Both the position numbers and the translations under genes were made by a program. From positions 124,001 to 188,000 of IMG/VR virus record IMGVR_UViG_3300042326_002445: a DNA stretch of 64,000 bases; one strand, given 5' to 3'. The notes beneath the pieces are model-generated. The model was not told the DNA's origin. It did no database searches and worked only from the letters and a program-made list of their open reading frames with translations. Positions 18,001-59,147 of the stretch are shown here, piece by piece. Each line of letters begins with the position of its first letter. Position 1 is the stretch's first letter.

Positions 18001-20884
18001 TGGTAATGATAGATTTGTTATTACTGGAAATAGTGGAAATGATAGTAGTGGCGCATTTACTTATGTATTTAAGTTTAAATCAAATGGACAACAGGACGCT
18101 GACTTCTTTACTGGTCCGGGCATGGTCTATGAGTCAAAAATAAATGATATGGCAGTTACAGGAATAAACGACCTGTGCAACCAGTCATTTAAGTATCAAG
18201 TTTGGATGAGCAACGATGCAAGTATTATAGCGATAGGTAATCATAGATGGGATGCTCAGGCAGATGAGGTAAGTCCAAACGGCGAACCTCTTCCAGCTTT
18301 GTTCTACATAGATTTGTATAAAAAGCAAGTAACAGGATCTAGTGTCTCATATACTAAATTGCTAGAGCAAGGTCTGTCTCCTTCTTCTACAAGTAATGGT
18401 GCGCCAGTTGACGTATTTTGTTCTGCTATTTGGGGTGTAGCTAATGGCTCTAACAATTCTTTATATGATATATATGTGTGTTCTGGCATAGATCCAGATA
18501 CTGACTATTTAGATTATTTAGATTCAAATACCGCTAATTATAATGCTTCAAATTTTGAAAGACGTTTAGGCAGAGTGACTGTTTTCACTGCTTCAATTCC
18601 TTCCGGCAATGGAGCTGTAAAAAGAACAATAGAGCTAAGCGATATCGTACCTCCCACAGATCCTACTTTTAGTGAAAATAATAAATCATTTGCTAATTTG
18701 AATTTCTGGACTATGACGCCAGTAAGCGCAAAGAACGGTAGTTGTGGTTTAATGTTCTACAACAATACACTTGTTGCTTCTTCTTTGGGTCACCTTATGA
18801 AGATGAGTCCATCTAATTCTCAAGGCTCTGGTTGGAATCTTGATAGTATTGTTGGAGGATCTCCAGTTCCTAATGTGTCAGTCAAAAGAGTTTTAACTCC
18901 TTATTCCCAATACGGGTATGTTGGAAATACAAATAATACTAACAATATAACTTATGCAGATAATTCTGATATCTCAGTCATGTCTACGGTATCAGTACCA
19001 ACAGTAAACGCTTCTGCTTCTCCTGGATTTAATAAATTAGCATCCAAGATAGCATTTATTGAACTTTCAATTGACAACAATCCATATAGAAAAATATTTT
19101 CTATATCTAACTATACATCGTTGGTTGTTGGGAATGCTGATGTATCTCAAGTTGGCGTATTTGACGTAAATGAAGATATGAGTAGTAGTATTTGTTATCC
19201 AGCATATTCTGCTCTAAGTGCAAAAAGATTTGGCTACACATCTGGTCAGCCAAATCCAGAAACTCAAATATATAACCCAAGTATAAAGTCTTGGATTTAT
19301 GCATATGATTTGTCAAGCAGTCTTGGAGACGGAGAGTTGCAATATTCTGGATACGAATATACTTCAGATAACGAAGCTCATATTTTAGTAAAGCCACCTG
19401 TTCCAGATATAGAAAAGAAGCAGTTTTATTTTGGAGGCAATGAATTCTTGCCACTAGACGGGAATAATGTTTACCGTGATTATCACAATCAAATAGATCA
19501 GATAAAAGGCACTCTGATGCAGATGGACTGGAATGACGTTTCCGGCATCTTGTGGTGGGGAACTAATGACATATATGTGATGAGATCATACAAATATGAT
19601 CAGCACTATTCTCCATCTACTTCTGATATATTGTTGGAAAATTATGCAGCAAACAAGACTTATTATAAGAGTTTATCTTTGGGTATTCAAAGTGTTAACA
19701 AAAATGCTATGGTAAAATTCTCCATGCCAAATAATAGTAACCAATTAGTGGCAAATCCGGCTTGTGGAGACAACGATTATATTGGAACTAGTGGGTGCGG
19801 ATTGACAGGACCAAAAGTCATTACTGTTTCTGCAGTAACAAATTATGGCACTTTTGATTTAATGCATCAAAATTTTACATCTATAATACCGTTATTAAGA
19901 TCTAGAGAAAAACTTGGATTACAACGTTGTGTAGTTGTTTTAAATGACTTTACTGATCATATGAATGAACAAATATACAGAGATTCAGGATTTGGTTTTA
20001 ATAATGTAATTCCATTCTACAATTATTCTGCATCTAAATTTTCAAATCCATATAGAGATTACGCATTAGACATGTTTATAGATGATTCTATGAGTTTACT
20101 TTATAGTAAATCTGCATTGCAAATTAATCAGGGTGGTTTTTCTATGCCTAATATTAGTATACCAAGATGTGAAGGTAATATAGTTTTTGCTAGAAAATCA
20201 GTGTATGGATTATATAATACAAAATGGAATTATTTGATCAAGGATTTCGCTGGGTGCTTTGATCCAAACCATGGATGCATATATAATGGTGATAGAATGC
20301 TTTTGATTAAGCTGTCTTACATATATGAAGATTCAGTGTCTGCATCACATCCAGAGGCAGAATGGTATTTTGCTCCTGTTCTGACGACTATTTCTAATGC
20401 AGACGTGCCTGATTACAAGCCATCAATGGGAGCTTGTGTTTGTTCAGGTGAAATGCGGAACGCTAGTCGCAAAGTGTCTAAGTGGAAAATGAATGGGTCT
20501 TCAGGAGGAAATGATAAGAATTTATTAGATATAATAACTGTAGGAATTGGGGATACTTCTCCGGCACCTATTAGGAATAAAATAAATACTTCTTCTAGTG
20601 AAAATTCATCAGTCAAAGATTTAGTATTGTGTGGAAAAATTAGTTCAAACTTTATTAACTATGCGCTAAATAAAACTGGTTCTGCAAACATATCTGAATT
20701 AATGACAAAGATTAAAAACAGTTTATATGACGTAATTGAAGGACAAAAGTTCATGGATCCTGCAGGATGCATACATATAGTCGATACAGATTCATCAGAT
20801 CAAATGGATAATGTCAAAGAAGAATTTATGAGAAAGTTTATGAATACATTTAATGGATTTTACCATATCATAAGAGGCGCATAA
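9041..20884 (+). CDS. giant protein (3947 aa) with RCC1-like and FG-GAP/integrin-like beta-propeller repeats; probable tail fibre/adhesin
   Basis: RCC1-like MSCGIDFIVGI and KLVCGDSFFAVY (about 10736-11107). FG...ISAP...G.G.VY-type repeats (about 11468-13000). Ser/Glu linker at about 9715-9790. Asn/Ser/Gly-rich beta composition. Confidence 0.7.
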   Translation: MIKIRKIIYWHFAIYAGDAETINPESLPNDSISTLDMGLNVDNPIIVNGSPNVRAFSASTGYEWLIDISVANGITRDSNDDDKRTTIRSNNPNASPGFVWFDLAVVELKAVLGNPIVVDTLEQLSLVKDDNNDGARVQVKYVLFGAHKEGETGAQLRNEPNAFFDATNIPNEVSSEGDQTHQQLVDAMSSKTFVDEDGVPNSFFINIKYQEEVTKIGCCNIDVSESSSSSSEESSSSSSEESSSSSSSSSTLESCSSGLTLRSQPSIHNDRRRIWAVRQTADVNISNNAIYEGNFFLGSGQVVRKNYIASELVYADVEDVLNGEKSWNEINWQHAGYISFRENKPYAMALHKDPIFNKSDLSHSDGNLCTYHAYDNNFDLPVSIQSISWDTRGYLWALCSGGAKDSTPVTSNVVNGIESTEGVYGLIPGGWKKYPADMLYFGGSNTGTSSEYEDLNSSSLTGEIFSMSWGCDRDKKNEFLSIIDSDLNISIRKNKNSNINFPEDDNIIGDDGTLLKASSIYSGIEKICIIELDTKLPYLLSYNSVDSDLKNAIDIERSNNTQYSYMSCGIDFIVGITSSSQVKIFVNRSGSEIPSQDDADDLQEFINDDISNGYSVKKLVCGDSFFAVYLSSSSGASKLYARGYINGVSIWDGSDYDSSFIKYSSWDLSETKPILDIDAFGSYLIVVYSEGLSSSSNKSVYYTVSTVLSDLPIHNTSSASSSNTVDFIDYEFLNQLRKIYLDNTSNVIDEWANLTTRTSLISSKGLLGYNTDIYSNNLSGKINIFENSEYLTHPYFAQSQNIESRMQVDSGMFGYDVSSFVWQNESYLAISAPTEGSLLGANNGGILGQQNGQHGRGAIYIFKRYDKGFKVIQKIQHPDANAIAFGKQICLFATKDASDTSVMSLVCSYRGNTSDYTRIYYWNDVDQLFEWSELSDGLMTVGGLNLDPSTTDVSIFEIKRISDISISISCFTNNNKTGYAQFINTSNNITLINQCSGSYVKLSSFNNLSFGARFGLSCVYEPTVGGVTVAVGYPTFNSAYLSSSIISFIDSVEEDSLEIKPPDNALIQQGNGAVMLFYLNGALTSFESDVNGPLYKIIEGSNFNPNVSTKPYFGYDIDADYKHIVISSPYDTGYSAVGESSNIQEGGSVRVFEFNQPSALGERDVFDASQSIINLNSLSQFNVPQQVYQLGGGAYSLQWQKKKFGKFVKLISNKILISACDDDLVIGPSAQSGSYGNVFMLDKNKSGTWSFTGCYYDAHKGDRFGHKIEVLSSSPSNDQNDFIAFISAPGNMTSAKALNGFSQNAVVGNTDYRYGAGIVKSVVVSGSKALGILPSRIPSVLVNQDDNVSAEYFIKSSALGLKHVAHDISSSVANSRYVWKYYPARLLEKSAIKTSINENSIPSFKLGKFIKDPVFAEAEDFASTYSDIGAFTLSNTASNVSDISIANLSLYDKENLNIRVMEMHPRPYRTVDASMSSPDQEDSAAANLPQQIRSDYFDFATPTFNELNDNVYLYAPIISPQSDRWRGSIDNTNSFAIAPVRANRWIVPISKISNDNYSIFIDGIAVWNPTSASVEYNISGGYYFNSSPFIRSSTSPHTDVTGNPLIKPYNGTINSGFWWSTRNYISPGCVQLVDSSTEGHMVVWPNFNLPQGTSSANTNWGASITSFSGTENFYLGKLSIKPGALSSDKTGVDACKIDKGYFWGLKLADGSYNVFINAYNTSTSVTGHRLHQTSKYLTWSGCTVAEDRNTNSTEYSSVYTGYMPSYESYDFNLGHILSYPPINFRCSTGNTRPYNQTLGGASTIDAIKLAPNGSTHALYLNAVGWNNTLMNVGVKDIIIHGHYNYHGFQKSNNTGDTNQISTIADRRSQIVTFVSGYGSKIYSINGNNNGPSYFAPSIKFTCILDQRLSSYKSWKNNFGGLADWNTSGNPYSAWGKVAKNPSHFANSFTNNPSWVTNSYPNSFNARVAPTDTMYMVDLFWDYDPDSNTPSPSQIRAAIFSSNFEGNFTDVYDNMLLPKKTERGLAQSDFNLFPIRAYPLNRNQLTHLSCTVCPQVLHIGEAVFFTGARDPQNDSATAYDDSRSAYFSASQNLSSSTCSNALRVEYNTSYINIVSCKTFTDGIGLVVGSNTNESGVHLSSFIGSSGLGSSWCSSSSSSYINNFSYKYKTILYPSITSIDHFRPSAAGFSYWDNTGTSTNTSLATVGALYNGGGPSLLQWYSHFASVFTPNGVSGPESNGTIGEYAPTYYTLQGSYNLPYLYNASNGNSISFWSRYRYNNTNAQTLLDKFPATLNGLVGNYFATNPVYPKLGKHSSFKYPYKTNMLTGRGRNVQVSVLGAELRSISRDEIVYQNEFIYRKLSYHRQNSSGTVNESGAEFSPVHSIDTVGSVNASASNLGSYVNNQNTNGDTWSNDATNIVSLNISNRLSPEDNSNLSKSHIREEYQTDIATNTVNGDQISKQYRRFSLFDRVSPKDFFNNPETLVCLPTFGMPDLLDFAVTVNSFTHIFGLVNTFSDMPSGDYPDSGNVGAVGFTGNLTTNDKNNLGYNVDAGKQSAFWKAIKNGLAHVIDVNSSVISTSQGQRILTVTILASLNGNTWSANSPSKHSFGWKNNISTQNIFGGGLICAVITAKLDINGEVSSVKSTFANSEATLSGSIKRSTVGTGPQVLPETSWCRMGIWLQPLLGTRKISKDNSPHYWPGNFPWSASSDIKYLGVNPGDQATSSTNYFHTSPGMIKVPINRSYMIKLGKHIMLKYNSGSGSEKYFAVIGPCVYRIENDELDKGPLWWANQNKSSCFKMPQYVWDSRPIVFQKFGLSFTDMSTINSANALFAFSAYSGEAQRMVQSFFRNDSYTQDFGANLVSEFAAYGTLNGGGGSQFPPNEQWFDYNSETEGFRIPVGVGAVNNSVAILGEGVGFNVSEGSKIHAFVFWRNAFYKIEPSASATSKKPKITQIPIIATYQDADGNPDSIATQLESAYSLHRLNGFFNGNDRFVITGNSGNDSSGAFTYVFKFKSNGQQDADFFTGPGMVYESKINDMAVTGINDLCNQSFKYQVWMSNDASIIAIGNHRWDAQADEVSPNGEPLPALFYIDLYKKQVTGSSVSYTKLLEQGLSPSSTSNGAPVDVFCSAIWGVANGSNNSLYDIYVCSGIDPDTDYLDYLDSNTANYNASNFERRLGRVTVFTASIPSGNGAVKRTIELSDIVPPTDPTFSENNKSFANLNFWTMTPVSAKNGSCGLMFYNNTLVASSLGHLMKMSPSNSQGSGWNLDSIVGGSPVPNVSVKRVLTPYSQYGYVGNTNNTNNITYADNSDISVMSTVSVPTVNASASPGFNKLASKIAFIELSIDNNPYRKIFSISNYTSLVVGNADVSQVGVFDVNEDMSSSICYPAYSALSAKRFGYTSGQPNPETQIYNPSIKSWIYAYDLSSSLGDGELQYSGYEYTSDNEAHILVKPPVPDIEKKQFYFGGNEFLPLDGNNVYRDYHNQIDQIKGTLMQMDWNDVSGILWWGTNDIYVMRSYKYDQHYSPSTSDILLENYAANKTYYKSLSLGIQSVNKNAMVKFSMPNNSNQLVANPACGDNDYIGTSGCGLTGPKVITVSAVTNYGTFDLMHQNFTSIIPLLRSREKLGLQRCVVVLNDFTDHMNEQIYRDSGFGFNNVIPFYNYSASKFSNPYRDYALDMFIDDSMSLLYSKSALQINQGGFSMPNISIPRCEGNIVFARKSVYGLYNTKWNYLIKDFAGCFDPNHGCIYNGDRMLLIKLSYIYEDSVSASHPEAEWYFAPVLTTISNADVPDYKPSMGACVCSGEMRNASRKVSKWKMNGSSGGNDKNLLDIITVGIGDTSPAPIRNKINTSSSENSSVKDLVLCGKISSNFINYALNKTGSANISELMTKIKNSLYDVIEGQKFMDPAGCIHIVDTDSSDQMDNVKEEFMRKFMNTFNGFYHIIRGA
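9722..9769 (+). repeat. 24-bp direct repeat x2 (TCTAGTTCTTCTGAAGAGTCTAGT) in a Ser/Glu linker
   Basis: Exact copies at 9722-9745 and 9746-9769. Confidence 0.95.
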
Positions 20885-23800
20885 TGATTAGAAACCCATT
20901 TGAAACTACACAGTATGCGTCTAATTTTTTAAAAGAAAATATTATACTAGATTCTTCTGGAATTGGATTAACTGGCATAGACGTTTTAATGCAATTTCTT
21001 GTTAATCAGACAAGGATACGTCAAGAGGCAATCAGGATAGGTTATATTTCTAATAATCCTGCTAAAATAGACGGCGAAGATTACAGTCAAATAAGTTTGC
21101 TAGGACTTTCCTTTGATACGCCTCAGGGAATATATGATACTTCTCTGCTGATTGTAAATGCTGTTAAGCAAATGTTTGCTGGGCATCCATCTGGTTTGTA
21201 TGAAAAAGTTGCATATAGACCATCAATTATACAGTATCAAAATCCAGATGACGAAGTTTACGTATTGAGGGCAGGTGGATTTTTTCATAAAATAGGTGAC
21301 CCAAGTTCTGAAGCAACTACAATTGGAGACGATTATTTTGAGTATTTTGATGAAATTGTTGATGGAGATTATTTGACAAGTGATGATATTGATCGATTTA
21401 ATAATCCTCCATCTTTCGATAATCCATCAAGCCCTTACGCAACTCTTAATGAATATTTAAAGGATCAAGTTAAATGGGTTAACAGTGCTATTTCAGTTCT
21501 AAATAAATTAAAATTTATAAATAATAAACTTGTATTTACTTATCCATTTGCCGACATTGCATTTGGCACAGGATGTTCTTTTACTAAAACAATTAGTTCA
21601 ACAACAGCTCCAGACTCTAACGGCAAGCCAGTTGAAATAATACTAGACATGTCAGAGGTCGTGGGCTCCTGTATAGAAAGCGGCACTGATTCTTATGGTT
21701 ATATATGCATAAGATGGAGGAGCATGGGGAACGGCTCAAGATTTGTCATCATGCCTACACTGGGCTCAAATGCTCAGCAAACAGAATTTTTGAGAAAACC
21801 TTTGTGGGGCGCAGCTGTAGTCACTCCTTCGTCTGACCAACCATATGTTCACAGTAGTTCTCAAGGTCAAGGCTATTTAAGTTCTTCAAATTTTATTGAA
21901 TACGCTTCTTCTGATGAAATATTAAAAACATGGGATCCAGAAAGCGGAAATGTTTATGATCGTCCTGTAAGTCCAATTTTGAGATCAGGATGTATGAACG
22001 CTCCATGTTGCACCACAAACAATAATACAAATAAGCCTCCGTTCAGAGAGGGTGGAAATGATGCTAATTCTGATTTTGCCTGTATCTTAATAGATAAAGC
22101 ACTTTTTTCTACAGGTACAGGTTCTGAATGGGATAACAAAATTAGAATAGTTATTTTTTCTGGCTGTCAAAGTACGGGTGAAAATACTTCTTGGGAACTT
22201 GAGTTAAACTGTTTAGCATGCAACAACTGCAACAGCGATCTTTCTATTTGTGGCGGCGTTGCTTCTTCTAGCTCTAGTTCTGAAAACTTTAATTTTGGCG
22301 TATTTGTACTTGATGATCAGAATAAAATTGGTAAAATAGATCTTATTACTGGCAACCTGTCTGGAAGAATATTAAGAATAAAAAATGATGAAGGTAACAC
22401 TTTAGATGATCAAATACATGATATTGATTTTGACGATGAAGGAAATCTTTATGGTCTTGGAACTTCTGGCATTTTATATTTGATAAATAAAATAAATGGA
22501 CATGCAGATATTGTCGGAGACTCTGGACTAAGGAATACGAGCGGTCTTGGTTTTGGTAAAGATGGAAAATTATACACGGTTAATAATTCGACTTTATGTT
22601 CTTTAAATACTATAAATGGCGGTAGTACGTCAATAGGAAATATCGGTTACACTGGGAACGGAGATATATGTAGTGCTAAGTCTGGCACAAACAGATTGCT
22701 GGTGTCTGCCAAAAATGGTAACTCTAATATATTATTAGAAGTTGCAATAGGAACAAGCGGCGTTACTTCATCAGTAAAACTTTCTGTTGTTCCTAGAGTT
22801 TTTGGTTTGGCGAGAGAGCGGGGATCTTCTACCCCTCAACCTGTAGCGATTGCTGATCAAAAAATATATGCCTTTAATAGATGGGACACGGGCAATGCTT
22901 CAATGGTGGCTATATGTGATTTTTCACAATCTGGCTTATGTTGTGGCGTAGGAGCTGCATATTGGGATGGAGACTTTGAAGACGATAACGCTTTTAGGCT
23001 AACAGCAGAAGATTGTTCTGTCATACCAGTATGGTTAATATGTGAGCCTACAGCGAGTGGACAGCCCGTAAAGCTTGTAAAGATAGATGTAAAAACTGGT
23101 AATATTTTATCTCAAATAGATGTAGGTGGAAGCTACTCTGGTAGTATACCTATGGATATAGCGGTAAACGACACAGGAGAAATTTACATCAACGACAGCG
23201 ACAGGCTGTATCGCGTTGATCCTAATACGGGTATTGCTACAATAGTAGGCAATATAACATTCTCCACTCCGCAATACGCACCAATATTATCTGGTTTATC
23301 TTTTAGTAAAGACAATGTTTTGTACGGTTTTGCCGCCGATGGATATTTCCCGCCAGGCCCTCAGGCCTTAGAGAAATTTCCATTATTTACAATTGACACT
23401 CAGACTGCAGTTGCTTCTGTAGCCTGTGACGATTTTGGAATTGGCTGCAGTGGTGATGCTGCCGTATGGACAAATGATCTTTTAGAAAATTACTTTTTTA
23501 TTATAGGCTCTGGAGAGGTAAATGATCAAATTTATATTTCAAGATATGATTCAGCTGACCAAGAATGCATTGGTGAGTTAATTACTACTTCTGATGAATT
23601 TACATACGGAAATAAAGTTTGGGCAATTACAAATGCAAAAGACGGATTTTTATATGTAATTGTTGGTGAATCTAATAATAAAATTATTAAAATTGACCCA
23701 AATACTTATAGTTGGATTGATACTGGATTGAATGTTCAAAATATAGGAGTTGCTCACGGGGCTGCTTGGGCTCCTAATGATTTAGTGTGTGTAGGTGTAG

Positions 23801-26800
23801 ATGGAAATTCTTCTTCAAGTTCTTCAAGTTCTTCAAGTGACAATAATGATCCATGTGTTTGTTTGACATCTTCTTCAAGCAGTTCATCATCTAGTTCATC
23901 ATCTAGTTCATCATCTAGTTCATCATCTAGTTCATCATCTAGTTCATCATCTAGTTCATCATCTAGTTCTAGCTCAAGTAGTGCATGTCCAGATTGCGAT
24001 AACATCCCCTCTATAATATTAGATAGAGAAGATTGGGCTAATGGAATAGTCAATTGTAGCAAGGTTGGATTCCCATCTGATGCAGTACTAAAAATAAAAT
24101 GGTTCAAAACTTGTGCTACATGCTGTGATTGCCCGCAAGAAAATCAATTTTCTATAGAATGTGACATAGAAATTAGCATATGGGATATTGATTGCATTTC
24201 TTGGGTGGATTTTTGGCAGTGGCTTATTACAAGTGGTCAAGCTCAACTTGTGATATGTAGCGTTGACGGCGGTTCTTGTAAATTTTATTGGAGAGCAGAA
24301 TTTACAAGAGACGCAGATTTGCCTTCTATATTTTACTGGGATTTTTCACAAAGATTCCAAGATTTTTTCCCTGATTATCCCGTAGATTGCTCATGCCCGA
24401 TATGTGATCCAAGTCCAAATTGCTGCACTTCAACATGCTTTGGATTGGGGACCATGATTAAGATGGCAGATGGTAGTGAAAAAAGGATAGAAGACATTAA
24501 AGAAGGAGACATACTCTTATCAGCTTACTTTAACGAATTTGGTATAGAGAGAAATCCAACTCTTGAGCAAATAAATAGCGGATGGACATTAAGTGATTCT
24601 CAATATATAAAATTTGCAGAAACAAGAGTTAAAAAGATTAGGATTGGTTCTGAATCTTCTATATACAAGTTTTCAGATTATTTGAAACTTACTTTTGAGC
24701 ACCCAGTGTTGATCATGGATGTTGATGGAGTTTTAAAGTTTAGAAGTGCAGTATACATGCAAGATAATGTATATGGGTACAACATAGATTTGGAAATGAC
24801 ACCGATGTCACATCCAAGTGTAATAAACAAAAAATCAATTACAATTAATATTACAACTGAGCCATTCCATTGCATATTCGCAGGAGGCATGCTAGTTCAT
24901 ACGGGTTCATCTAATAACTATACTAACACGATAGGATTTGGCGAAATAGGTGTTAGCATAAATACTAGCCTTTATAAGGATTTAATAAATCCAGCAACTT
25001 CTACTATAGAGAATGGCTCTACAAATATTGGGTTAATTTCAGATGGACTTGGAACCAACAATCCTACTACTGGCAGCCCCCTAGATGGGAATGAAGTGGT
25101 TGTTGCAGATAATCCATTCGTATGTCAATTTGCATGCAGGTGCTCAAGTGGAAATTGTAACACTGTTAAGTTTGTAAGTTCATGGCAATTAGGCAATCCA
25201 ATTGCTCTATGTGCAAATCCTACATCTTGTTGTTCGGATGGTCAATGCGCAAGAGGAGACGCAGATTGTAAAGATTCTTCAGATAATGTAGTACTTATAG
25301 AAAGAACTATAGTTGCTAGAGACTGCAATGATGCTTGTAGAAAATGTGCTAACATGGCCACTCAAGATCTTACTTTTGTGGGGAGCCCAGCAAATGAGTG
25401 CTTTAACGCTTCTTTGCTGTGCGGCGCAGGCAGCTCTTCATCTTCAGTTATTTCTTCATCTTCTAGCAGTAGTTCTCAAATTACTGGAGATGAGGTAGTG
25501 CTTTGGATAAATCCGCCTATGAAAGCTGTAGACAATGGCAGTGGAAGCATGATAGTTCAAGGCGAGTATACCGCTCATCTTTTAAGTAACGGTAACGATG
25601 GCACATTATTTGCTCAACAATTCCAAGTTCCTGTTAATTGCGAATGGAGAGTATATAAGTTTAGAATGTGGGGCGGAAGTGAATATTTCAACGAGAGTAC
25701 TGGCGGATCAGATGGAAATCAATTAAGCAGCAACATAGCTTCTATCAGAATTAACATATTCAAATTGCAGCAATCAACAGGTACTTGGGAAATATATTCA
25801 AGCGCCACTGGATATTTGAAGATTTCAAGTTCTCTAATACTGAATGATCAGGGCAGTACTTTTACTACTCCGAATCCATCAAAGAATTTTCAAATTGATA
25901 TGAATTTTGACCCCAGCGTATCTACAACTCTTAATCAGGGATCTTATCTTTTAGCTATTGGCGGAGTGCGTATGGTTACAAGCTCATTTTTGCCAAAGTT
26001 AATTTGGACAAATGGTCAAATTCCTGGAGGCAAGTATAAAACAGATAATTTTAATTGGGGATCTTTTAATGAGGAATCAGGTGGAGGTAGTTTATCTGGT
26101 GCTATAATTGGCATACGTAGTCCTACATGTGTTGTAAGTTCATCATCTAGTTCATCATCTAGTTCTAGCAGCAGTAGTTCAAGTTCTGGGTGTGTTGTTT
26201 GGACTGGTCCTGGCTGCCCGGACATGGATGGTGACGGGTTTGTTGGTGGTTCAGACCTTGCAGTATATTTCAGTGCTTCTGCAGATTATAACCCGATTGC
26301 TGACTTAAATGGAGATGGCGTTGTTGACGGATTGGATCTTGGTATTCTTCAATCATATTGGGGTTCGTGCGTCGAATGTCCTAATTGGAACGGTAGCAGT
26401 AGTTCAAGCAGTAGTTCAAGCAGTTCTAGCTTCTCATGCGTTCAGTCATTTGGACAATGGTTAAATACAACTGGGACTCAGGCATATTCTAGCATTATAG
26501 ATTTAAATGGATTTGATATCCAATCAGATTCCAGCGGTGAATATATAGATATTTGTATTGAATATGTGACAGGTTCAGAAGCTGCTGATAGGATAATGAT
26601 AGTAGCCACAAGAGATGACGAATTGTCTACAGATGCTGTCCTTAAGAATGGTGATTTAGACTATGAGCATTATGGAAGAAGACTTCTCTATGAAAATGGT
26701 CAATTATCTGGTTTTTCTCATCCAGATCATCCCATCTTTGCATACGAAGGCAGCCAATTTACTCTACCTAGTAGGTCAATATTGTTTGATAGTGGATGTG

Positions 26801-28899
26801 TTGCTACTGGGGCTACTTCTTCTGTTATCACAACGATAAGAGTAAGACAATTTTCTGTTGCATTTGATCCGGTAGATCCTATGTACAAAAAACTAAGATT
26901 AGTAGTATTTGGAGTATGTAGCTCGGATTTAGACCCAGATAGTATAACAAATTGGTGGGTAGATTTAGGATGTGATATTCTCAATTGTAATGTTACATCT
27001 TCTAGCTCTTCATCGTCCTCAAGCAGCTCGTCTTCGTCTTCAAGTGCATCTTCTTCATCTTCTTCAGGATGCACTAGAATATGGTCTAATCCAGGATGTC
27101 CAGATTTAAACAACGACGGATTTATTAATGGTAATGATTTTGGCTTTTTCTTGGGTATTATGTTCGGACCAGTAGATTATAATAACATTGTTTCTATTGC
27201 AGCCGATTTAGATGGGGATGGAAACATTAGTGGAGCTGACATGGGTCTCTTTCAAGGACTTACCTATGGATGCATAAAGTGTCCAAATTTCGATTGGTCT
27301 GCTAGTTCATCATCTAGTTCATCATCTAGTTCATCATCTAGTTCTAGCAGTTCATCATCTAGTTCTAGCAGTTCATCATCTAGTTCATCCATTCCATCCG
27401 GTCCTCCACTCAAAATTTATGGATCTAATAAATTTGGAAGATTTATTTCTGATGCTAAGAATGATAGAAATGTAGTAGACATTATATATATAGGTCAAGA
27501 TTCAAGATTTTGGGTTTCTGGATTAAATAGAGGCTTTAATTCTCTTGGAACAAAATCTTATGGGTCTCCATTTATGCCAGCTACTACATCAAACTCATAC
27601 GATATTGCACAAAATGTAACTACTTTATCAAATGACTGGGAGCCAGGATTTTTTCGTAGATTTAGTGAAACTGGAGCTATACTCCAGAAAGGTAGTGCTG
27701 TTTTCCCTGATGAAGGCATATATGAATCGTTACATAATTCTGTTAAGCCATATGGAAAGGGAATTGAGTGGGGATTTGCGCCAGAAATAGTAGAAGAATT
27801 TTATGTAGAATATTCTTCTGGTATATATGCGGCAAACACTGAACCTTCTATCGGTATTCCGCTAGATGATAATTCTGTATTGGAATACATGGTCATTAGA
27901 GTTGCTAATTTCACTGGTTCTTACACTCTTTCTGTATCTTCATACGATGGAGAAAATATATTTGTTAGCTCCCCGTTTGCTGGCGATTCACTTTCTACCT
28001 CAGAATGGGTAGTAGACAAAGTTGAGTTCCTTTACTCGTACAATGTTCATGGCGTATCTGGTCTTAAATTCTCATTCTTGGGCTCTATGAGAGACGGGCC
28101 TCGATCAGGAATAAGCGGAGATTTTGCAGTAGGACTGCACAGTTTGCATAGAAAAGGCATAGGAGGATTGGCTATTACTCCATTCCATACCTATGAAGGA
28201 GCAACTCTTGAATCAATACGGTCAGATTTTAACAAAGCTGAAGTGATTTTTACGCTTCAAACATATTTAAAAGTAATAAATCAAAGATCAGTTTCTGCTT
28301 ACAACTCTTTAGATGTCACTGTTGGTAGTCCAGGTAGAATGGTTTTCTTCATACAGGCAAATTCAAATTCTGAATCTACTCTTTTAGAGGATATTCAGGA
28401 CATAAAAGACCAAATTACGGCAGTATGTCTTAGCCTTGGCTTTGATGAGGAAAACTTTACTTTCTGTGTAATGATTCCAGCGGCTGTAAGTGAATTTGAT
28501 GAAGAATTAGTCAGTCAGCGTCAAACAATCGCTGATGCTATTATAGAGGATCAAACCTCTGTAGGCAATACTGTTTTTGTTAACATCCCTGCAATATTCT
28601 CTTACAGAGAAATGATTGATAATGGCTGGGCGACTGTCTCTGAACTTGCTCCTAGTAGTTTTACCGGAGGTCAATGCTGCGATGTTTTCGAGTATTGTGT
28701 AAGGTGGTCCGATTCAGACCCTACATTGTGCTTAGATTTTCGCAGACGCTGGACGTGCTGGGATTGTGATGGCCCTGGCCCAACTCTTGTGTGTGGCGTA
28801 ATTGAGGCCGGAGGGCCAGGCACAGGAGGTAGTTCTTCTTCCACTTCAGAAGGAGAAAGTAGCAGCTCTTCAAGTAATGAAAAGTTCCCATTTATTTAA
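20884..28899 (+). CDS. giant modular protein (2671 aa): Cys-bounded modules, two propeller regions, Hint domain, two dockerin/EF-hand-like modules and about 9 poly-Ser linkers
   Basis: Motifs read from the translation: DIDFDDEGNLYG / DIAVNDTGEIY; CFGLGTMIKMADG...TFEHP...GMLVHT; DLNGDGVVDGLDLG. Confidence 0.8.
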   Translation: MIRNPFETTQYASNFLKENIILDSSGIGLTGIDVLMQFLVNQTRIRQEAIRIGYISNNPAKIDGEDYSQISLLGLSFDTPQGIYDTSLLIVNAVKQMFAGHPSGLYEKVAYRPSIIQYQNPDDEVYVLRAGGFFHKIGDPSSEATTIGDDYFEYFDEIVDGDYLTSDDIDRFNNPPSFDNPSSPYATLNEYLKDQVKWVNSAISVLNKLKFINNKLVFTYPFADIAFGTGCSFTKTISSTTAPDSNGKPVEIILDMSEVVGSCIESGTDSYGYICIRWRSMGNGSRFVIMPTLGSNAQQTEFLRKPLWGAAVVTPSSDQPYVHSSSQGQGYLSSSNFIEYASSDEILKTWDPESGNVYDRPVSPILRSGCMNAPCCTTNNNTNKPPFREGGNDANSDFACILIDKALFSTGTGSEWDNKIRIVIFSGCQSTGENTSWELELNCLACNNCNSDLSICGGVASSSSSSENFNFGVFVLDDQNKIGKIDLITGNLSGRILRIKNDEGNTLDDQIHDIDFDDEGNLYGLGTSGILYLINKINGHADIVGDSGLRNTSGLGFGKDGKLYTVNNSTLCSLNTINGGSTSIGNIGYTGNGDICSAKSGTNRLLVSAKNGNSNILLEVAIGTSGVTSSVKLSVVPRVFGLARERGSSTPQPVAIADQKIYAFNRWDTGNASMVAICDFSQSGLCCGVGAAYWDGDFEDDNAFRLTAEDCSVIPVWLICEPTASGQPVKLVKIDVKTGNILSQIDVGGSYSGSIPMDIAVNDTGEIYINDSDRLYRVDPNTGIATIVGNITFSTPQYAPILSGLSFSKDNVLYGFAADGYFPPGPQALEKFPLFTIDTQTAVASVACDDFGIGCSGDAAVWTNDLLENYFFIIGSGEVNDQIYISRYDSADQECIGELITTSDEFTYGNKVWAITNAKDGFLYVIVGESNNKIIKIDPNTYSWIDTGLNVQNIGVAHGAAWAPNDLVCVGVDGNSSSSSSSSSSDNNDPCVCLTSSSSSSSSSSSSSSSSSSSSSSSSSSSSSSSSSSSSSSACPDCDNIPSIILDREDWANGIVNCSKVGFPSDAVLKIKWFKTCATCCDCPQENQFSIECDIEISIWDIDCISWVDFWQWLITSGQAQLVICSVDGGSCKFYWRAEFTRDADLPSIFYWDFSQRFQDFFPDYPVDCSCPICDPSPNCCTSTCFGLGTMIKMADGSEKRIEDIKEGDILLSAYFNEFGIERNPTLEQINSGWTLSDSQYIKFAETRVKKIRIGSESSIYKFSDYLKLTFEHPVLIMDVDGVLKFRSAVYMQDNVYGYNIDLEMTPMSHPSVINKKSITINITTEPFHCIFAGGMLVHTGSSNNYTNTIGFGEIGVSINTSLYKDLINPATSTIENGSTNIGLISDGLGTNNPTTGSPLDGNEVVVADNPFVCQFACRCSSGNCNTVKFVSSWQLGNPIALCANPTSCCSDGQCARGDADCKDSSDNVVLIERTIVARDCNDACRKCANMATQDLTFVGSPANECFNASLLCGAGSSSSSVISSSSSSSSQITGDEVVLWINPPMKAVDNGSGSMIVQGEYTAHLLSNGNDGTLFAQQFQVPVNCEWRVYKFRMWGGSEYFNESTGGSDGNQLSSNIASIRINIFKLQQSTGTWEIYSSATGYLKISSSLILNDQGSTFTTPNPSKNFQIDMNFDPSVSTTLNQGSYLLAIGGVRMVTSSFLPKLIWTNGQIPGGKYKTDNFNWGSFNEESGGGSLSGAIIGIRSPTCVVSSSSSSSSSSSSSSSSSGCVVWTGPGCPDMDGDGFVGGSDLAVYFSASADYNPIADLNGDGVVDGLDLGILQSYWGSCVECPNWNGSSSSSSSSSSSSFSCVQSFGQWLNTTGTQAYSSIIDLNGFDIQSDSSGEYIDICIEYVTGSEAADRIMIVATRDDELSTDAVLKNGDLDYEHYGRRLLYENGQLSGFSHPDHPIFAYEGSQFTLPSRSILFDSGCVATGATSSVITTIRVRQFSVAFDPVDPMYKKLRLVVFGVCSSDLDPDSITNWWVDLGCDILNCNVTSSSSSSSSSSSSSSSSASSSSSSGCTRIWSNPGCPDLNNDGFINGNDFGFFLGIMFGPVDYNNIVSIAADLDGDGNISGADMGLFQGLTYGCIKCPNFDWSASSSSSSSSSSSSSSSSSSSSSSSSSSSSSIPSGPPLKIYGSNKFGRFISDAKNDRNVVDIIYIGQDSRFWVSGLNRGFNSLGTKSYGSPFMPATTSNSYDIAQNVTTLSNDWEPGFFRRFSETGAILQKGSAVFPDEGIYESLHNSVKPYGKGIEWGFAPEIVEEFYVEYSSGIYAANTEPSIGIPLDDNSVLEYMVIRVANFTGSYTLSVSSYDGENIFVSSPFAGDSLSTSEWVVDKVEFLYSYNVHGVSGLKFSFLGSMRDGPRSGISGDFAVGLHSLHRKGIGGLAITPFHTYEGATLESIRSDFNKAEVIFTLQTYLKVINQRSVSAYNSLDVTVGSPGRMVFFIQANSNSESTLLEDIQDIKDQITAVCLSLGFDEENFTFCVMIPAAVSEFDEELVSQRQTIADAIIEDQTSVGNTVFVNIPAIFSYREMIDNGWATVSELAPSSFTGGQCCDVFEYCVRWSDSDPTLCLDFRRRWTCWDCDGPGPTLVCGVIEAGGPGTGGSSSSTSEGESSSSSSNEKFPFI
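23881..23964 (+). repeat. 12-bp tandem repeat AGTTCATCATCT x7 encoding poly-Ser
   Basis: Seven exact units; the same 12-mer recurs at 26137-26160 (x2) and 27304-27381 (x5, interrupted by AGTTCTAGC). Confidence 0.95.
24436..24903 (+). other. Hint (intein-like/Hedgehog-type) domain within the 2671-aa protein, 156 aa
   Basis: Block A CFGLGTMIKMADGSEKRIEDIKEGD, block B LTFEHP, C-terminal FHCIFAGGMLVHT. No homing endonuclease and no terminal Asn. Confidence 0.85.
26215..26370 (+). other. dockerin type I / EF-hand-like Ca-binding module 1
   Basis: CPDMDGDGFVGGSDL...ADLNGDGVVDGLDLGILQSYWGSC contains paired DxxxDGxxxxxD loops. Confidence 0.8.
27097..27273 (+). other. dockerin type I / EF-hand-like Ca-binding module 2
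   Basis: CPDLNNDGFINGNDF...ADLDGDGNISGADMGLFQGLTYGC. Confidence 0.8.
27304..27381 (+). repeat. poly-Ser tract built from AGTTCATCATCT and AGTTCTAGC units
   Basis: Three 12-mers, a 9-mer, a 12-mer, a 9-mer and a 12-mer. Confidence 0.9.
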
Positions 28900-38543: not shown

Positions 38544-39324
38544 GGAAAGAAAAAACAAATACGCATCTATGGTGTTTTCTCGTTCTGGGATTTGCAGCGA
38601 TTTTGTCTCATGCTTCTCCAATAAAGAAAGCAATATTCTTTTGGCGTGCAGTGGTGGCCCAGATAGCGCTGCTATGATGGGAATTTCGAGAGTTTTACTT
38701 AATAGAGGCCTTGTTAAAAAGGTTGAGGTCGTTCATGTAAACCACAACCTTAGAGAAGAGGCTTTGAATGATGCTGAGATGTGCGAGTCTCAAGCAGACA
38801 TGTTTGATTTGCCATTTTTTTACTATGATATTTATCCTGGGCTTTTTGAAAAAAACACATATGAAGCTGGTAGAGAATTAAGATACCAGATCCTTCAGCA
38901 CCATGCCCTCAAACATCATAGCGATGTGATCATGACGGCGCATCATGCAGACGACATTGCCGAAACCGTTATGATGCATTTGGCAAGAGGATGTGGCATC
39001 AACGGTCTTTGTGGTGTCAGAGAAAGAAACTCTTCATTTGGACATGTTGATGTTGTAAGACCACTACTTAAGGTCAGAAAGAAAAAATTAGAAGAATTGT
39101 GCAATAAGGCTAATGTCCCTTATTGTATTGATAAATCTAACTTCAATACAGAAAAGTCAAGAGCATATGTTAGGCACTCTGTAATTCCAGTTCTTGAAAA
39201 ATTAAACCCAGCTTTTGTTGAACATGTTGTTAAAACAGCAATGTTCATGCAAGACATTGTCGAGAAAGAATCATATGGGAAAAACAATAGAACCAAAAAG
39301 CATACTTCCAGTATTGACGGCTAA
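38536..39324 (+). CDS. tilS: tRNA(Ile)-lysidine synthetase, catalytic domain only
   Basis: PP-loop SGGPDS, HVNHNLR, RELRY, TAHHADDIAET, RPLL, DKSN, R.YVRH.VIP. About 262 aa, with no C-terminal tRNA-binding domains. Confidence 0.9.
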   Translation: MLKERKNKYASMVFSRSGICSDFVSCFSNKESNILLACSGGPDSAAMMGISRVLLNRGLVKKVEVVHVNHNLREEALNDAEMCESQADMFDLPFFYYDIYPGLFEKNTYEAGRELRYQILQHHALKHHSDVIMTAHHADDIAETVMMHLARGCGINGLCGVRERNSSFGHVDVVRPLLKVRKKKLEELCNKANVPYCIDKSNFNTEKSRAYVRHSVIPVLEKLNPAFVEHVVKTAMFMQDIVEKESYGKNNRTKKHTSSIDG

Positions 39325-39337
39325 TCAGGAGCAGATT

Positions 39338-40387
39338 ATGCATAATAAATTTGAGCCAGATGTAAAACTTGATTTTTGTGATGTACTAATTTTGCCAAAA
39401 TCTACTTCTGTAAGTAGCAGAAAAGAAGTCAATCTTGAAGTTCCATTGAACTTCAGAAAAGCCGGTTTTTCTTTACCATGCGTTCCTGTGTGTGCATCCA
39501 ATATGGACGGAGTGGGAACCATTTCGATGGGCAACAAGTTGGCATCATACAAAATGATAACAACTTTAACAAAGTATACAACAGCTGGCGTTTTTGAGAA
39601 AGAAGACTATAAAAAATCAGATTACGTTTTTGGAACGTTTGGGTTAGATGATTACAGCAAATCTCTTATCCTCAACGAAAATATAGAAAATTACTTTTCT
39701 ACTATTTGCCTTGATGTCGCAAATGGTTATATGGGCAAATTTTTAGATTTTGTTAGTCTCGTTAGGGAGCGTTGGCCGCACATTGGTATACTCGCTGGCA
39801 ATGTTGTCACCCCAGAGGGAGTTATCGATACCGCTCGTGCTGGTGCTGACTTTGTCAAAGTTGGCATAGGAAGTGGCTCAGTGTGCACAACACGGCGCGT
39901 TGCTGGCATAGGTTATCCTCAACTTTCAGCTCTTTTAGATTGTCGGATTGCTGCTGAGGAAAGTGAATGCGGCATAGTTAGTGACGGCGGATGTGTTCAT
40001 CCAGGGGACGTGTCTAAGGCTTTTGCCGCTGGCGCTGAGATCGTTCTGCTTGGTGGGATGCTCGCTGGTCATGACGAGGGCGCAGACGATGCAGTGGTCA
40101 TTGACGATGGAGAAAAGAGAAGATTTATTTTCTCAGGATCTTCTTCTTCACGTGCTTTAAAAAAGATAGGAAATAATTCTAAGTACAGAACTTCGGAAGG
40201 AAGAGTTGTGCTTATGGAAGCTAAGGGTTCAGTTGAAGAAACTGTAAATCACATTTTGGGAGGCTTGCGTTCAACTTGTTCTTACACAAACTGTTTTGAT
40301 CTTAAAGATTTGTATATGAATTCGAAATTCATTCGTGTCAATAGACAACTTAATGAGTACTTCGAACATCACACAATAGGTGTTTAA
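39338..40387 (+). CDS. guaC: GMP reductase
   Basis: [62 protein letters not shown] lies 6 nt before ATG 39338, giving 349 aa. Confidence 0.92.
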
Positions 40388-43952: not shown

Positions 43953-44039
43953 GGACAGATGTCCGAGTGGTTGAAGGAGCAGCATTGGAAATGCTGTTTA
44001 CGGGAAACCGTAACGTGGGTTCGAATCCCACTCTGTCCG
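43953..44039 (+). tRNA. tRNA-Ser(GGA), CCA not encoded
   Basis: Acceptor GGACAGA/TCTGTCC, anticodon arm CAGCA-TTGGAAA-TGCTG, long variable arm, T-arm GTGGG-TTCGAAT-CCCAC, discriminator G. Confidence 0.95.
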
Positions 44040-44052
44040 CTATGGAGTTTCT

Positions 44053-47143: not shown

Positions 47144-47902
47144 ATGACCTCCATGTTTACTCTTTTAACAGCAAGTTATAATAATATTTCGTATCTTGAG
47201 CAGTGGATGCACAGTGTTTTATCTCAAGATTATAGACCTTTACGTGTTTCTTTCGTTGATGATTGCAGCAATGATGGGACTGACGTGAATTTTCATAAAT
47301 ATGCACAAAAATTAGCAAATCAAGACATACAAGTAGAATACGTAAAAAATAGCAAAAGACTTTTTTATGGAAATTGTCTAAAGATCGCTTATGACATGTC
47401 AAAGGGAGATTTTTTTGGCTGTTTAGACGCAGATGATGGCTTAACCTCAGACGCCGTCTCTTCCGTAATGGAACAATATTTAAAATATCCGCATATTGGT
47501 TACGTGTATACTCAGTTTAAAATGTGCGACATCAATCTTAATCCTACGAAAAGAGGTTTTAGTTCATGTCCACCTATGGGTAGCAGTCTTTTAAATGAGG
47601 GCAAAAGGAATAAACATTGTTATAGTCATTTTAGAACTTTTTCTAATAGGGTAGAAAGATTGGAAAAAATATGGGCAAAAGATATGAGGTGCGCTGTTGA
47701 TAAATACATGGGATATCGTCTTGAGGAGCTCGCAGACGGCCTGTTTCTCGACAAAGAGTGTTATCTGTGGAGGACTGGCAGAAAAGACTCCATAGGACAT
47801 ACAGAGCCATCTAGGGCTCAGTGGACAAAGGTTATGATTGAAGCCCGTAAGAGACGCACTATGTGGAAATTAAGTCCAAGACCAATCATTCATATAAAAT
47901 GA
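47144..47902 (+). CDS. GT2 glycosyltransferase
   Basis: TLLTASYNN...VDDCSNDGT...GCLDADD. Confidence 0.9.
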   Translation: MTSMFTLLTASYNNISYLEQWMHSVLSQDYRPLRVSFVDDCSNDGTDVNFHKYAQKLANQDIQVEYVKNSKRLFYGNCLKIAYDMSKGDFFGCLDADDGLTSDAVSSVMEQYLKYPHIGYVYTQFKMCDINLNPTKRGFSSCPPMGSSLLNEGKRNKHCYSHFRTFSNRVERLEKIWAKDMRCAVDKYMGYRLEELADGLFLDKECYLWRTGRKDSIGHTEPSRAQWTKVMIEARKRRTMWKLSPRPIIHIK

Positions 47903-59146: not shown

Positions 59147-59147
59147 C

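What the first reader, a model, noticed from the sequence alone, without database searches (positions are those of the whole stretch)
26188..27300. Duplicated dockerin/EF-hand cassette resembling planctomycete (Phycisphaerae) C-terminal domains
Seen: two cassettes with the same frame, polySer-GC..W..PGCPD[x]xxDG...ADLxGDG...C(VE/IK)CPN(W/F)-polySer. Established: DxxxDGxxxxxD pairs are dockerin/EF-hand Ca-binding loops. From recall, ADLNGDGVVDGLDLG....WG.C closely resembles a module common in Phycisphaerales proteins. Inference: host-derived mimicry, which would suggest a Planctomycetota host and use of a dockerin-type handle to bind a host surface partner or to assemble fibre subunits.
Basis: partly seen in the sequence, partly recalled or inferred. 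Interest (0 to 1): 0.62.

Follow-up and report, generated by a model that had tools for sequence, protein, structure and literature searches.

The report
Planctomycete-type dockerins in a lake megaphage
Two calcium-binding "dockerin" plug modules, of the kind that lake Phycisphaerae bacteria put on their own surface proteins, sit inside a 2,671-residue protein of an uncultured giant lake phage, and together with host-like tRNA genes they point to those bacteria as the likely host.

Summary
Window 26185-26391 and 27067-27294 encode two dockerin modules, 41% identical (E 2e-19). Each has two Ca-loop/helix repeats inside a four-Cys frame and is flanked by polySer linkers. Both lie in one 2,671-aa ORF (20884-28899).

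The window belongs to a 223.6-kb, 35% GC virus record from lake water. That record carries nine dockerins in four otherwise unrelated giant ORFs.

- Of the 80 best cellular matches, 65 are Planctomycetota, mostly Phycisphaerae.
- Sister cassettes pass NCBIfam's GC-type dockerin cut-off. The two window cassettes fall just below it.
- A shape search also returns mainly Planctomycetota.

Five phage tRNA genes give independent, suggestive support for a Phycisphaerales link. tRNA-Ser(GGA) is up to 93% identical there, against at most 89%, 86% and 84% in the controls.

Several things are not shown:
- No recent capture: cassette GC3 is 0.28-0.35, like the phage.
- No cohesin partner was found in the phage, and few in candidate hosts.
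- No binding was demonstrated.
- The phage modules are internal, whereas the bacterial ones are C-terminal.

Best reading: Ca-dependent docking handles on polySer-jointed giant phage proteins, possibly engaging whatever partner holds the host's own dockerin-bearing proteins. It is a new variant of a known kind.

The parts
20884..28899 (+). Giant ORF (2,671 aa, P0001) carrying both cassettes. It has 15% Ser, 3.1% Cys, nine polySer runs, and no signal peptide or TM helix.
26137..26187 (+). PolySer linker (17 Ser) upstream of cassette 1
26185..26391 (+). Dockerin cassette 1 (aa 1768-1836). Ca loops are at nt 26221-26256 and 26302-26337, with Cys at cassette positions 3, 11, 62 and 65. The AF2 model has pLDDT 78.7 and two helices.
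26395..26430 (+). PolySer linker downstream of cassette 1
26431..26997 (+). Intervening domain of about 190 aa (aa 1850-2038) with no family match. It is predicted mostly beta, but the model is unusable (pLDDT 37).
26998..27066 (+). PolySer linker upstream of cassette 2
27067..27294 (+). Dockerin cassette 2 (aa 2062-2137). Ca loops are at nt 27103-27138 and 27205-27240, with the same four-Cys frame. Its closest relative is the cassette of the 2,599-aa ORF (52% identity).
27304..27390 (+). PolySer linker (29 Ser) downstream of cassette 2
27391..28899 (+). C-terminal domain of about 490 aa, unrelated to the C-terminal domains that follow the dockerins in the other three giant ORFs
43953..44040 (+). 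Phage tRNA-Ser(GGA). It is 91-93% identical to tRNA-Ser genes of a Phycisphaerales sublineage and differs by GC-to-AT changes, including two compensatory pairs. This is the host-link evidence.

Best explanation
The two cassettes are genuine dockerin modules. Each is a pair of Ca2+-binding F-hand loops with two helices. An inner Cys pair (before loop 1 and after the W-G) probably staples the ends together, and a second, outer Cys pair is specific to the phage. They belong to the sequence flavour that Phycisphaerales use as the C-terminal 'GC-type dockerin' domain on 50-100 proteins per genome.

Here they are internal beads on polySer tethers. They are two of nine dockerins in four otherwise unrelated giant proteins of an uncultured lake megaphage (at least 224 kb, 35% GC). 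In all four proteins the dockerins are joined by polySer to a different C-terminal domain of 460-740 aa; in three they come directly before it, while in P0001 cassette 1 is separated from cassette 2 by a ~190-aa domain and the 1,777-aa protein has a fourth dockerin at its N-terminus.

The most likely mechanism is inferred, not shown. The modules would act as Ca2+-dependent protein-docking handles on virion-associated giant proteins. They would plug these proteins into the still unidentified partner that holds the host's own dockerin-bearing surface proteins, which would help the phage adsorb to lake Phycisphaerales.

Shown: dockerin identity and fold, the planctomycete-type sequence, spread of the module within the genome, and tRNA affinity to Phycisphaerales. 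Inferred: Ca2+ binding, disulfide staples, virion location, the partner and the host.
For: Dockerin identity:
- Pfam Dockerin_1 scores above its gathering cut-off.
- A PDB profile search returns dockerins of cohesin-dockerin complexes first.
- The AF2 model (pLDDT 78.7) has dockerins as its top 16 Foldseek PDB hits; the best is 2y3n_B, TM 0.69/0.79.

Planctomycete type:
- 65 of the 80 best cellular loci are Planctomycetota, 42 of them labelled Phycisphaer*.
- Per-domain scores against these loci are mostly 30-50 bits, against about 19-22 bits for solved cellulosomal dockerins.
- NF041540 dockerin_GC gives 31.0 and 30.4 bits (cut-off 29) for two sister cassettes and 26 bits for cassette 1.
- The same model gives 52-96 matches per Phycisphaerales genome.
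- In the ESM Atlas shape search, 8 of 10 nearest cluster sets have Planctomycetota as the commonest phylum.

Cys staple: in 84 cellular relatives the two inner Cys co-occur (40 both, 32 neither, 12 one only; Fisher p 1.8e-11).

Modular use:
- The dockerin is the only module shared among the four dockerin-bearing proteins, and in each the dockerins are joined by polySer to an unrelated C-terminal domain.
- Cassette D1 and cassette B1, in a gene 90 kb away, are 97.4% identical over 265 nt.

Not secreted: there is no signal peptide or TM segment.

Host link:
- tRNA-Ser(GGA) is at least 90% identical in 12 of 201 Phycisphaerales genomes, with a maximum of 93%.
- Control maxima are 86% in 301 Planctomycetota at large, 84% in 301 Pseudomonadota, 89% in 201 Acidobacteriota, and at most 82% in phage and plasmid collections.
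- The Tyr/Thr/Asn/Ser cluster matches about 44 of 201 Phycisphaerales genomes at E<=1e-17, against 0 of 201 Pseudomonadota and 1 of 201 Acidobacteriota.
- Both the phage and these bacteria are from lake water.
- Freshwater Phycisphaerae have been proposed to build surface cohesin-dockerin complexes (PMC6461901).
Against: - No cohesin was found in the 55%-complete phage record. Pfam cohesin was found in only 2 of 10 candidate-host genomes, so the partner is unknown.
- Bacterial relatives are C-terminal in 74 of 84 cases. None of the nine phage modules is.
- The window cassettes fall below the NF041540 cut-off.
- Phage GC is 35%, against 58-74% in the candidate hosts.
- Cassette GC3 shows no high-GC donor.
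- The lake CL500-3 Phycisphaerae are reported as 0.4 x 0.3 um cells, which is small for a phage this large.
- The tRNA-Ser margin over Acidobacteriota is only about 4 nt in 88, and Bacteroidota, Cyanobacteriota, Actinomycetota, Verrucomicrobiota and Bacillota could not be sampled properly.
- No spacer-like match was found in the 20 kb tried.
- No capsid, tail or fibre family hit places the giant proteins in the virion.
Confidence: 0.4

Rival explanations
1. The dockerins assemble the phage's own structures. They would bind cohesin-like or other modules in the phage's other giant proteins and build a multi-subunit fibre or coat, with no role in host recognition.
For: Nine dockerins sit in four of the twelve giant ORFs, which together make up about 44% of the record. 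The architecture (variable body, polySer, dockerin, polySer, variable head) resembles scaffold-assembled systems. The eight giant ORFs without dockerins have no annotation and could hide partners.
Against: Six-frame Pfam cohesin search of the record found nothing at E<=1. The only modules shared among the giants are the dockerin, one roughly 200-aa stretch and internal repeats in one ORF. This reading does not explain why the modules follow the Phycisphaerales flavour.
Confidence: 0.25
2. The cassettes have no specific partner. They are small, Ca2+- and Cys-stabilised structural beads that stiffen or space domains along a flexible, possibly O-glycosylated polySer chain outside the cell.
For: Many other module boundaries in P0001 also end in Cys motifs next to polySer runs. 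The record encodes several glycosyltransferases and nucleotide-sugar epimerases. Dockerin-like modules without cohesins are widespread, and few candidate hosts have a cohesin.
Against: Five cassettes share 23 invariant positions, and one pair in genes 90 kb apart is 97.4% identical at the DNA level. That suggests selection on a specific surface rather than on a generic spacer. In every solved case listed, the fold works as a binding module.
Confidence: 0.2
3. The resemblance to Phycisphaerales dockerins and tRNAs reflects old or indirect gene flow or convergence. The phage would then infect another, lower-GC lake bacterium.
For: Phage GC is 35%, against 58-74% in Phycisphaerales. There is no high-GC signature in the cassettes. 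The N-terminal 1,010 aa of P0001 have no match in five Phycisphaerales genomes. The named cellular relatives of the phage GMP reductase are Chlamydiota and Proteobacteria at about 46-47% identity. tRNA-Ser reaches 89% in Acidobacteriota, and several major lake phyla were not testable. The dockerin tree is unresolved.
Against: Two independent kinds of gene point to the same order: nine dockerins and five tRNAs. The control phyla score clearly lower on the four-tRNA cluster. The tRNA-Ser differences are GC-to-AT changes with two compensatory pairs, as expected for a host-derived gene ameliorating in an AT-rich phage. From general knowledge, some jumbo phages such as phiKZ on Pseudomonas differ from their hosts by about 30 GC points.
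Confidence: 0.15

Closest known systems
NCBIfam NF041540 'GC-type dockerin domain-anchored protein' domain of Phycisphaerales
   Same: Both have two F-hand loops with the ADLNGDGVV...DLG..L..WG.C consensus and a Cys before loop 1 paired with a Cys after W-G. Two sister cassettes in the same phage pass the model's cut-off.
   Different: The bacterial domain sits at the extreme C-terminus (74 of 84) of proteins from 58-74% GC genomes. The phage modules are internal, flanked by polySer, and carry a second outer Cys pair plus a CPN[WF] tail that was seen in only 2-4 of 80 relatives. The two window cassettes score 26.0 and 12.6 bits, below the cut-off of 29.
Type I/II dockerins of clostridial and ruminococcal cellulosomes (Pfam PF00404; e.g. 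PDB 2y3n, 2vn5, 1ohz)
   Same: The fold and the duplicated Ca-loop/helix repeat are shared. They are the best sequence and structure matches among solved structures.
   Different: Per-stretch scores are lower (about 19-22 bits against 30-50 bits for planctomycete modules). The cellulosomal modules have no Cys staples and no polySer flanks, and they have a known cohesin partner. No cohesin is detectable here.
Proposed 'planctosome' cohesin/dockerin complex of freshwater Nemodlikiaceae (CL500-3 Phycisphaerae), Andrei et al. 2019 (PMC6461901)
   Same: It occurs in the same habitat and the same bacterial class as the best dockerin and tRNA matches. It is a surface complex proposed to be held together by Ca-dependent cohesin-dockerin contacts, and would be a candidate docking site.
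   Different: That model is itself hypothetical. Pfam cohesins were found in only 2 of 10 Phycisphaerales genomes tested here. A phage dockerin and a Phycisphaerales cohesin gave no verdict in the complex test.
[quoted passage not shown] 2023, as cited in bioRxiv 10.64898/2026.06.07.730766)
   Same: These are very long proteins with multiple PF00404 dockerins in a PVC-related lineage.
   Different: They are cellular proteins that combine dockerins with TSP3 repeats. Here the carrier is a virus record with phage replication genes, and its modules are Cys-framed and polySer-flanked.
EF-hand pairs (calmodulin-like)
   Same: The 12-residue Ca-loop consensus is shared. There are weak Pfam EF-hand and calmodulin matches.
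   Different: The scores are below all EF-hand cut-offs. The helix preceding each loop is missing (an F-hand only), and the structural matches are dockerins, not calmodulins (TM 0.2-0.3).

Membership tests
Dockerin (Pfam PF00404 Dockerin_1) | Score at or above the Pfam gathering cut-off (22.9 bits) | tested here: met
   The whole protein scores 36.1 bits (E 7.3e-9) and cassette 1 alone scores 30.0 bits. Cassette 2 alone scores 19.9 bits, below the cut-off, but aligns over profile positions 3-49. The genome-wide search gives nine matches in four ORFs.
Dockerin (Pfam PF00404 Dockerin_1) | Two tandem Ca-binding loops (D-x-[DN]-x-[DN]-G...D), each followed by a helix | tested here: met
   The loops lie at aa 1780-1791 and 1807-1818 in cassette 1, and 2074-2085 and 2108-2119 in cassette 2. 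The AF2 model has helices at cassette residues 22-30 and 49-57, directly after the loops.
Dockerin (Pfam PF00404 Dockerin_1) | Dockerin fold | tested here: met
   The model has pLDDT 78.7. The 16 best Foldseek PDB hits are all dockerins (best 2y3n_B, TM 0.69/0.79, probability 1.00), although E-values are weak (8e-3) for so small a domain.
Dockerin (Pfam PF00404 Dockerin_1) | Ca2+-dependent binding to a cohesin partner | tested here: inconclusive
   There is no Pfam cohesin in the phage record. The complex prediction with a Phycisphaerales cohesin and 2 Ca gave no verdict. Real binding needs an experiment.
GC-type dockerin domain (NCBIfam NF041540) | Score at or above the curated cut-off (29 bits) | tested here: not met
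   Cassette 1 scores 26.0 bits (25.7 in the genome scan) and cassette 2 scores 12.6 bits. The two cassettes of the 5,597-aa ORF elsewhere in the genome do pass, at 31.0 and 30.4 bits.
GC-type dockerin domain (NCBIfam NF041540) | Location at the extreme C-terminus of the protein (the position implied by the family's name, 'domain-anchored protein') | tested here: not met
   74 of 84 cellular relatives end within 12 aa of the ORF end. Both window cassettes, and all nine phage modules, are internal or N-terminal.
GC-type dockerin domain (NCBIfam NF041540) | Cys before loop 1 paired with a Cys after the final W-G | tested here: met
   Cassette positions C11 and C62 are invariant in the five phage cassettes. 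The same two positions co-occur in cellular relatives (40 both, 32 neither, 12 one only; p 1.8e-11).
EF-hand (Pfam PF00036/PF13499) | Score at or above the gathering cut-off; helix-loop-helix with a helix entering the loop | tested here: not met
   The best EF-hand score is 19.5 bits against a cut-off of 25.4. The model shows no helix before either loop.

The most novel reading that the evidence does not exclude
A huge freshwater phage of Phycisphaerales (CL500-3-like planctomycetes) has copied the bacterium's own surface-anchoring domain onto four giant, polySer-jointed virion proteins. It would use this 'anchor mimicry' to dock, Ca2+-dependently, onto the receptor that normally holds 50-100 host surface proteins. 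That receptor would be one the host cannot easily lose. This would be both a new adsorption principle and the first host-linked megaphage for this abundant, uncultured lake lineage.
Probability: 0.2. Interest if true: 0.8.

Novelty: new variant of a known kind. Interest (0 to 1): 0.6.

Why it matters
Dockerins are known as assembly plugs of bacterial surface machines. They are barely documented in phages: tblastn against 50,697 GenBank phage records found no match to this cassette, and only a handful of IMG/VR contigs carry anything similar.

Here a planctomycete-flavoured, doubly Cys-framed version has spread through four giant proteins of a phage that recurs in at least 23 lake-water metagenome runs. 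If the modules engage the partner of the host's own dockerin-bearing proteins, three things follow:
- The unknown receptor of the Phycisphaerales 'GC-type dockerin' system would be identified, using the phage module as bait.
- A new way for phages to recognise cells would be shown.
- A virus would be tied to the dominant, uncultured lake planctomycetes.

Even without that, the cassette is a compact, self-contained Ca-dependent module that may be useful as a protein-docking tag.

Tried and rejected
- **Complex prediction.** Cassette 1 with the cohesin domain of a Phycisphaerales cohesin+dockerin protein (L095:1414-1884, minus strand) and 2 Ca gave no verdict (score 0.02). This is no evidence either way.
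- **The search for homologous proteins on P0001 residues 1760-2145.** Nothing was returned, probably because polySer words swamped candidate selection. Uninformative.
- **The search of protein representatives with the five-cassette profile.** It gave 12,963 hits, but the top 150 are multi-dockerin proteins without the four-Cys frame and without taxonomy.
- **AF2 of the inter-cassette domain without an alignment.** pLDDT was 37, so the model is unusable and its fold, cohesin-like or not, is unknown.
- **Pfam and PHROG scans.** Scans of P0001 domains, the other two window giants and nine further ORFs of the giant-gene block found no capsid, tail or fibre family. There were only weak beta-propeller and Hint-like hits.
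- **Maximum-likelihood tree of 89 dockerins.** It was essentially unresolved (67 of 86 forks open). Neither a donor nor a single origin can be claimed.
- **Spacer-like matches.** 20 kb of phage DNA against 201 Phycisphaerales genomes, and another 20 kb against five lake MAGs, matched only tRNA genes and conserved RecA/DnaE stretches at 72-88% identity. About 80% of the phage was not searched.
- **Phage relatives.** Helicase and DnaE tblastn against GenBank phages gave at most 35% identity, with mixed hosts. DnaE found no close relative in IMG/VR.
- **GMP reductase homologues.** They gave no host signal. One 'Chlamydiota' hit lies on a 2.5-kb phage-like contig.
- **N-terminal 1,010 aa of P0001.** No match in five Phycisphaerales genomes. 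One whole-protein search failed on the server.
- **PurZ reading of a PHROG hit.** Rejected: NCBIfam favours PurA (293 bits against 99 for PurZ).
- **Housekeeping.** Only genetic code 11 was used. Read laying was given 2,301 letters.
Full report
**What is there.**
The finding lies inside one ORF, window 20884-28899 (+), of 2,671 aa. Cassette 1 (window 26185-26391) and cassette 2 (window 27067-27294) share 41% identity (E 2e-19). Pfam Dockerin_1 matches at E 7.3e-9, above its gathering score.

Each cassette holds two 12-residue Ca-type loops followed by a helix. The frame is G-C-x4-W-x2-PGCPD at the start and C-x2-CPN[WF] at the end. PolySer runs of 12-29 residues lie on both sides.

An AF2 model of cassette 1, built on a 52-sequence alignment, has pLDDT 78.7 and two helices directly after the loops. 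Its 16 best PDB matches are all dockerins from cohesin-dockerin complexes. A profile search of PDB sequences gives the same answer, with calmodulins far behind.

**Context.**
The window is bases 124001-188000 of a 223,646-bp IMG/VR virus record. CheckV rates it 55% complete, and its GC is about 35%.

- It encodes phage-type replication and nucleotide genes: a split DnaE-like polymerase, DnaB, a UvsX-like recombinase, clamp and clamp loader, helicases, an HNH endonuclease, a resolvase, dCMP deaminase and a sigma factor.
- It carries seven tRNA genes.
- No capsid, terminase or tail gene was recognised among the roughly 55 ORFs scanned.
- Twelve ORFs of 1,232-5,597 aa make up about 44% of the record.
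- Near-identical DNA is held by at least 23 lake-water metagenome runs.
- A second IMG/VR assembly carries the identical ORF.
- Short-read contigs from four runs cover each cassette without differences but break at the polySer runs.

**The cassette is a mobile module within this genome.**
A Pfam scan of the whole record finds nine dockerins in four giant ORFs. Five of them share the four-Cys frame and polySer flanks, with 23 invariant positions. The other four, in a 1,777-aa ORF, lack the frame.

Apart from the dockerins, the four proteins are unrelated. In each, the dockerins are joined by polySer to a different C-terminal domain of 460-740 aa; in P0001 cassette 1 lies one ~190-aa domain further upstream.

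Cassette 1 and a cassette in the 5,597-aa ORF 90 kb away are 97.4% identical over 265 nt. That indicates recent copying or gene conversion. None of the four proteins has a signal peptide or a transmembrane segment.

**Is it planctomycete-like?**
Yes. A scan of one genome per 185,579 species with the five-cassette profile returned 80 best loci. By their record titles, 65 are Planctomycetota (42 labelled Phycisphaer*), 13 belong to other phyla and 2 are unlabelled.

There is a caveat. Three other measures agree, however:
- Per-domain scores against these loci are mostly 30-50 bits, against about 19-22 bits for solved cellulosomal dockerins.
- NCBIfam's NF041540 'GC-type dockerin' model gives 52-96 matches per Phycisphaerales genome. 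It passes its cut-off on two of the phage's cassettes (31.0 and 30.4 bits against 29). Cassette 1 of the window scores 26 and cassette 2 scores 12.6.
- A shape search of the ESM Atlas gives Planctomycetota as the commonest phylum in 8 of 10 nearest cluster sets, and a feature search leans the same way.

In the bacteria the domain is terminal: 74 of 84 end within 12 aa of the ORF end. A Cys before loop 1 and a Cys after the final W-G co-occur strongly (40 both, 32 neither, 12 one only; p 1.8e-11, not corrected for relatedness). That fits a staple joining the two ends. The phage keeps this pair and adds an outer pair plus the CPN[WF] tail, which is almost absent from the relatives.

**Was it recently taken from a host?**
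This is not shown. Cassette GC3 is 0.28-0.35, against 0.20-0.25 for the genes around it. That is far from what a 58-74% GC donor would leave. A tree of 89 modules is unresolved.

**Host.**
A 20-kb DNA search against five lake Planctomycetota MAGs unexpectedly matched the phage tRNA-Ser(GGA) (window 43953-44040) at 89-93% identity. Follow-up gave these figures for tRNA-Ser(GGA):

| Sample | Result |
|---|---|
| 201 genomes of the same order (it includes a Phycisphaera sp., so Phycisphaerales) | 12 at 90% or more, 27 at 88% or more, maximum 93% |
| Even sample of 301 Planctomycetota | maximum 86% |
| 301 Pseudomonadota | maximum 84% |
| 201 Acidobacteriota | 89% in two genomes, otherwise at most 85% full length |
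| Single genomes of three other phyla | 71-79% |
| 50,697 phage records and 72,556 plasmid records | at most 82% |

The six differences from the best Phycisphaerales genes are mostly GC-to-AT changes and include two compensatory stem pairs.

The cluster of four further tRNAs (Tyr, Thr, Asn, Ser) matches about 44 of 201 Phycisphaerales genomes at E<=1e-17. The same search matches 0 of 201 Pseudomonadota and 1 of 201 Acidobacteriota.

This is a second, independent pointer to Phycisphaerales, but it has limits:
- The tRNA-Ser margin is only about four bases.
- No spacer-like match was found in the 40 kb tried.
- The GC gap of about 25-35 points is unusual.
- The small cells reported for CL500-3 (0.4 x 0.3 um; PMC6461901) count against this host.

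**Mechanism.**
Every solved relative of this fold is a Ca-dependent protein-docking module. Freshwater Phycisphaerae have been proposed to assemble a surface 'planctosome' through cohesin-dockerin contacts (PMC6461901). But Pfam cohesin is absent from the phage record and present in only 2 of 10 Phycisphaerales genomes tested, even though each has dozens of GC-type dockerins. The natural partner of this dockerin flavour is therefore unknown. The one complex prediction gave no verdict.

My best reading (confidence about 0.4) is that the cassettes are docking handles on virion-associated giant proteins, and that they engage the partner of the host's own dockerin-bearing proteins. The rival readings are assembly among the phage's own giant proteins, partner-less Ca/Cys-stabilised spacers, and a non-PVC host with old gene flow.

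**Comparison and novelty.**
The modules are dockerins: Pfam membership, loops and fold are all met. They work like, and look like, the Phycisphaerales GC-type dockerin. However, the two window cassettes miss that family's cut-off, and none of the phage modules has the family's terminal position. They are best called a phage-borne, internal, doubly Cys-framed, polySer-flanked variant.

The cassette has no match in GenBank phages. In IMG/VR the framed form occurs only in this phage, although a few other viral contigs and one reported jumbo phage carry dockerin-like modules. The verdict is a new variant of a known kind, with interest 0.6.

Noticed in passing
window 24436-24909 (P0001 aa 1185-1342): A Hint/intein-like segment. 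It starts with a Cys followed by the G-T-M-I-x-M-A-D-G motif and ends L-V-H-T-G, without the usual Asn. It gives weak Pfam Hint-family hits (E 6e-4 to 0.3) and matches PHROG 38766 'virion structural protein' (E 3e-6). It might self-cleave the giant protein at aa 1184/1185.
   Followed up: partly
window 22294-23808 (P0001 aa about 471-975): A beta-propeller-like region with sub-threshold hits to DUF4394, DUF5074, DUF6923, Kelch and tachylectin. It could be a lectin-type binding domain.
   Followed up: partly
whole record G000:C1 (e.g. 362-84878 and window 3234-28899): Twelve ORFs of 1,232-5,597 aa take up about 44% of the 223.6-kb record. Almost none has a family match. Seven of them contain long polySer runs.
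   Followed up: partly
G000:C1:60763-61027 versus window 26160-26424: A 265-nt stretch is 97.4% identical between two giant genes 90 kb apart, which suggests recent gene conversion or duplication of the cassette. Short-read contigs mix the two copies.
   Followed up: yes
window 47863-50259; L096:1626-2702; L097:8225-9826; L101:1173-2204; L102:2545-3540: There are several glycosyltransferases and two nucleotide-sugar epimerases. Together with the polySer linkers, this suggests the phage may O-glycosylate its giant proteins.
   Followed up: no
window 39215-40387 and L101:16639-17649 (minus strand; genome 204639-205649): A GMP reductase, with related copies on 244-kb and 370-kb metagenome contigs, and a short PurA-like adenylosuccinate synthase. 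PHROGs labels the latter PurZ-like, but NCBIfam favours PurA (293 bits against 99).
   Followed up: partly
genome 206032-206123 (L101:18032-18123, minus strand) and window 43953-44040: There are two phage tRNA-Ser genes. ARAGORN calls one with the unusual anticodon ACT, which reads AGT, and AGT is common in the polySer runs. The seven tRNAs serve Ser, Asn, Tyr, Thr, Gln and Val. Most of these amino acids are enriched in an AT-rich, Ser-rich proteome.
   Followed up: partly
L096:13192-16489 (genome 97192-100489): The DnaE-like DNA polymerase III alpha is split into two overlapping adjacent ORFs (450 and 650 aa). Both hit PHROG 405.
   Followed up: no
window 55672-63677: A tight run of eleven same-strand ORFs of about 190-320 aa. 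One was scanned and had no PHROG hit. They may be a paralogous family.
   Followed up: no
L095 (G002:C6:85607-88927, minus strand): A Phycisphaerales protein combines a cohesin domain with a C-terminal dockerin. It resembles the 'adaptor' of the proposed planctosome.
   Followed up: partly
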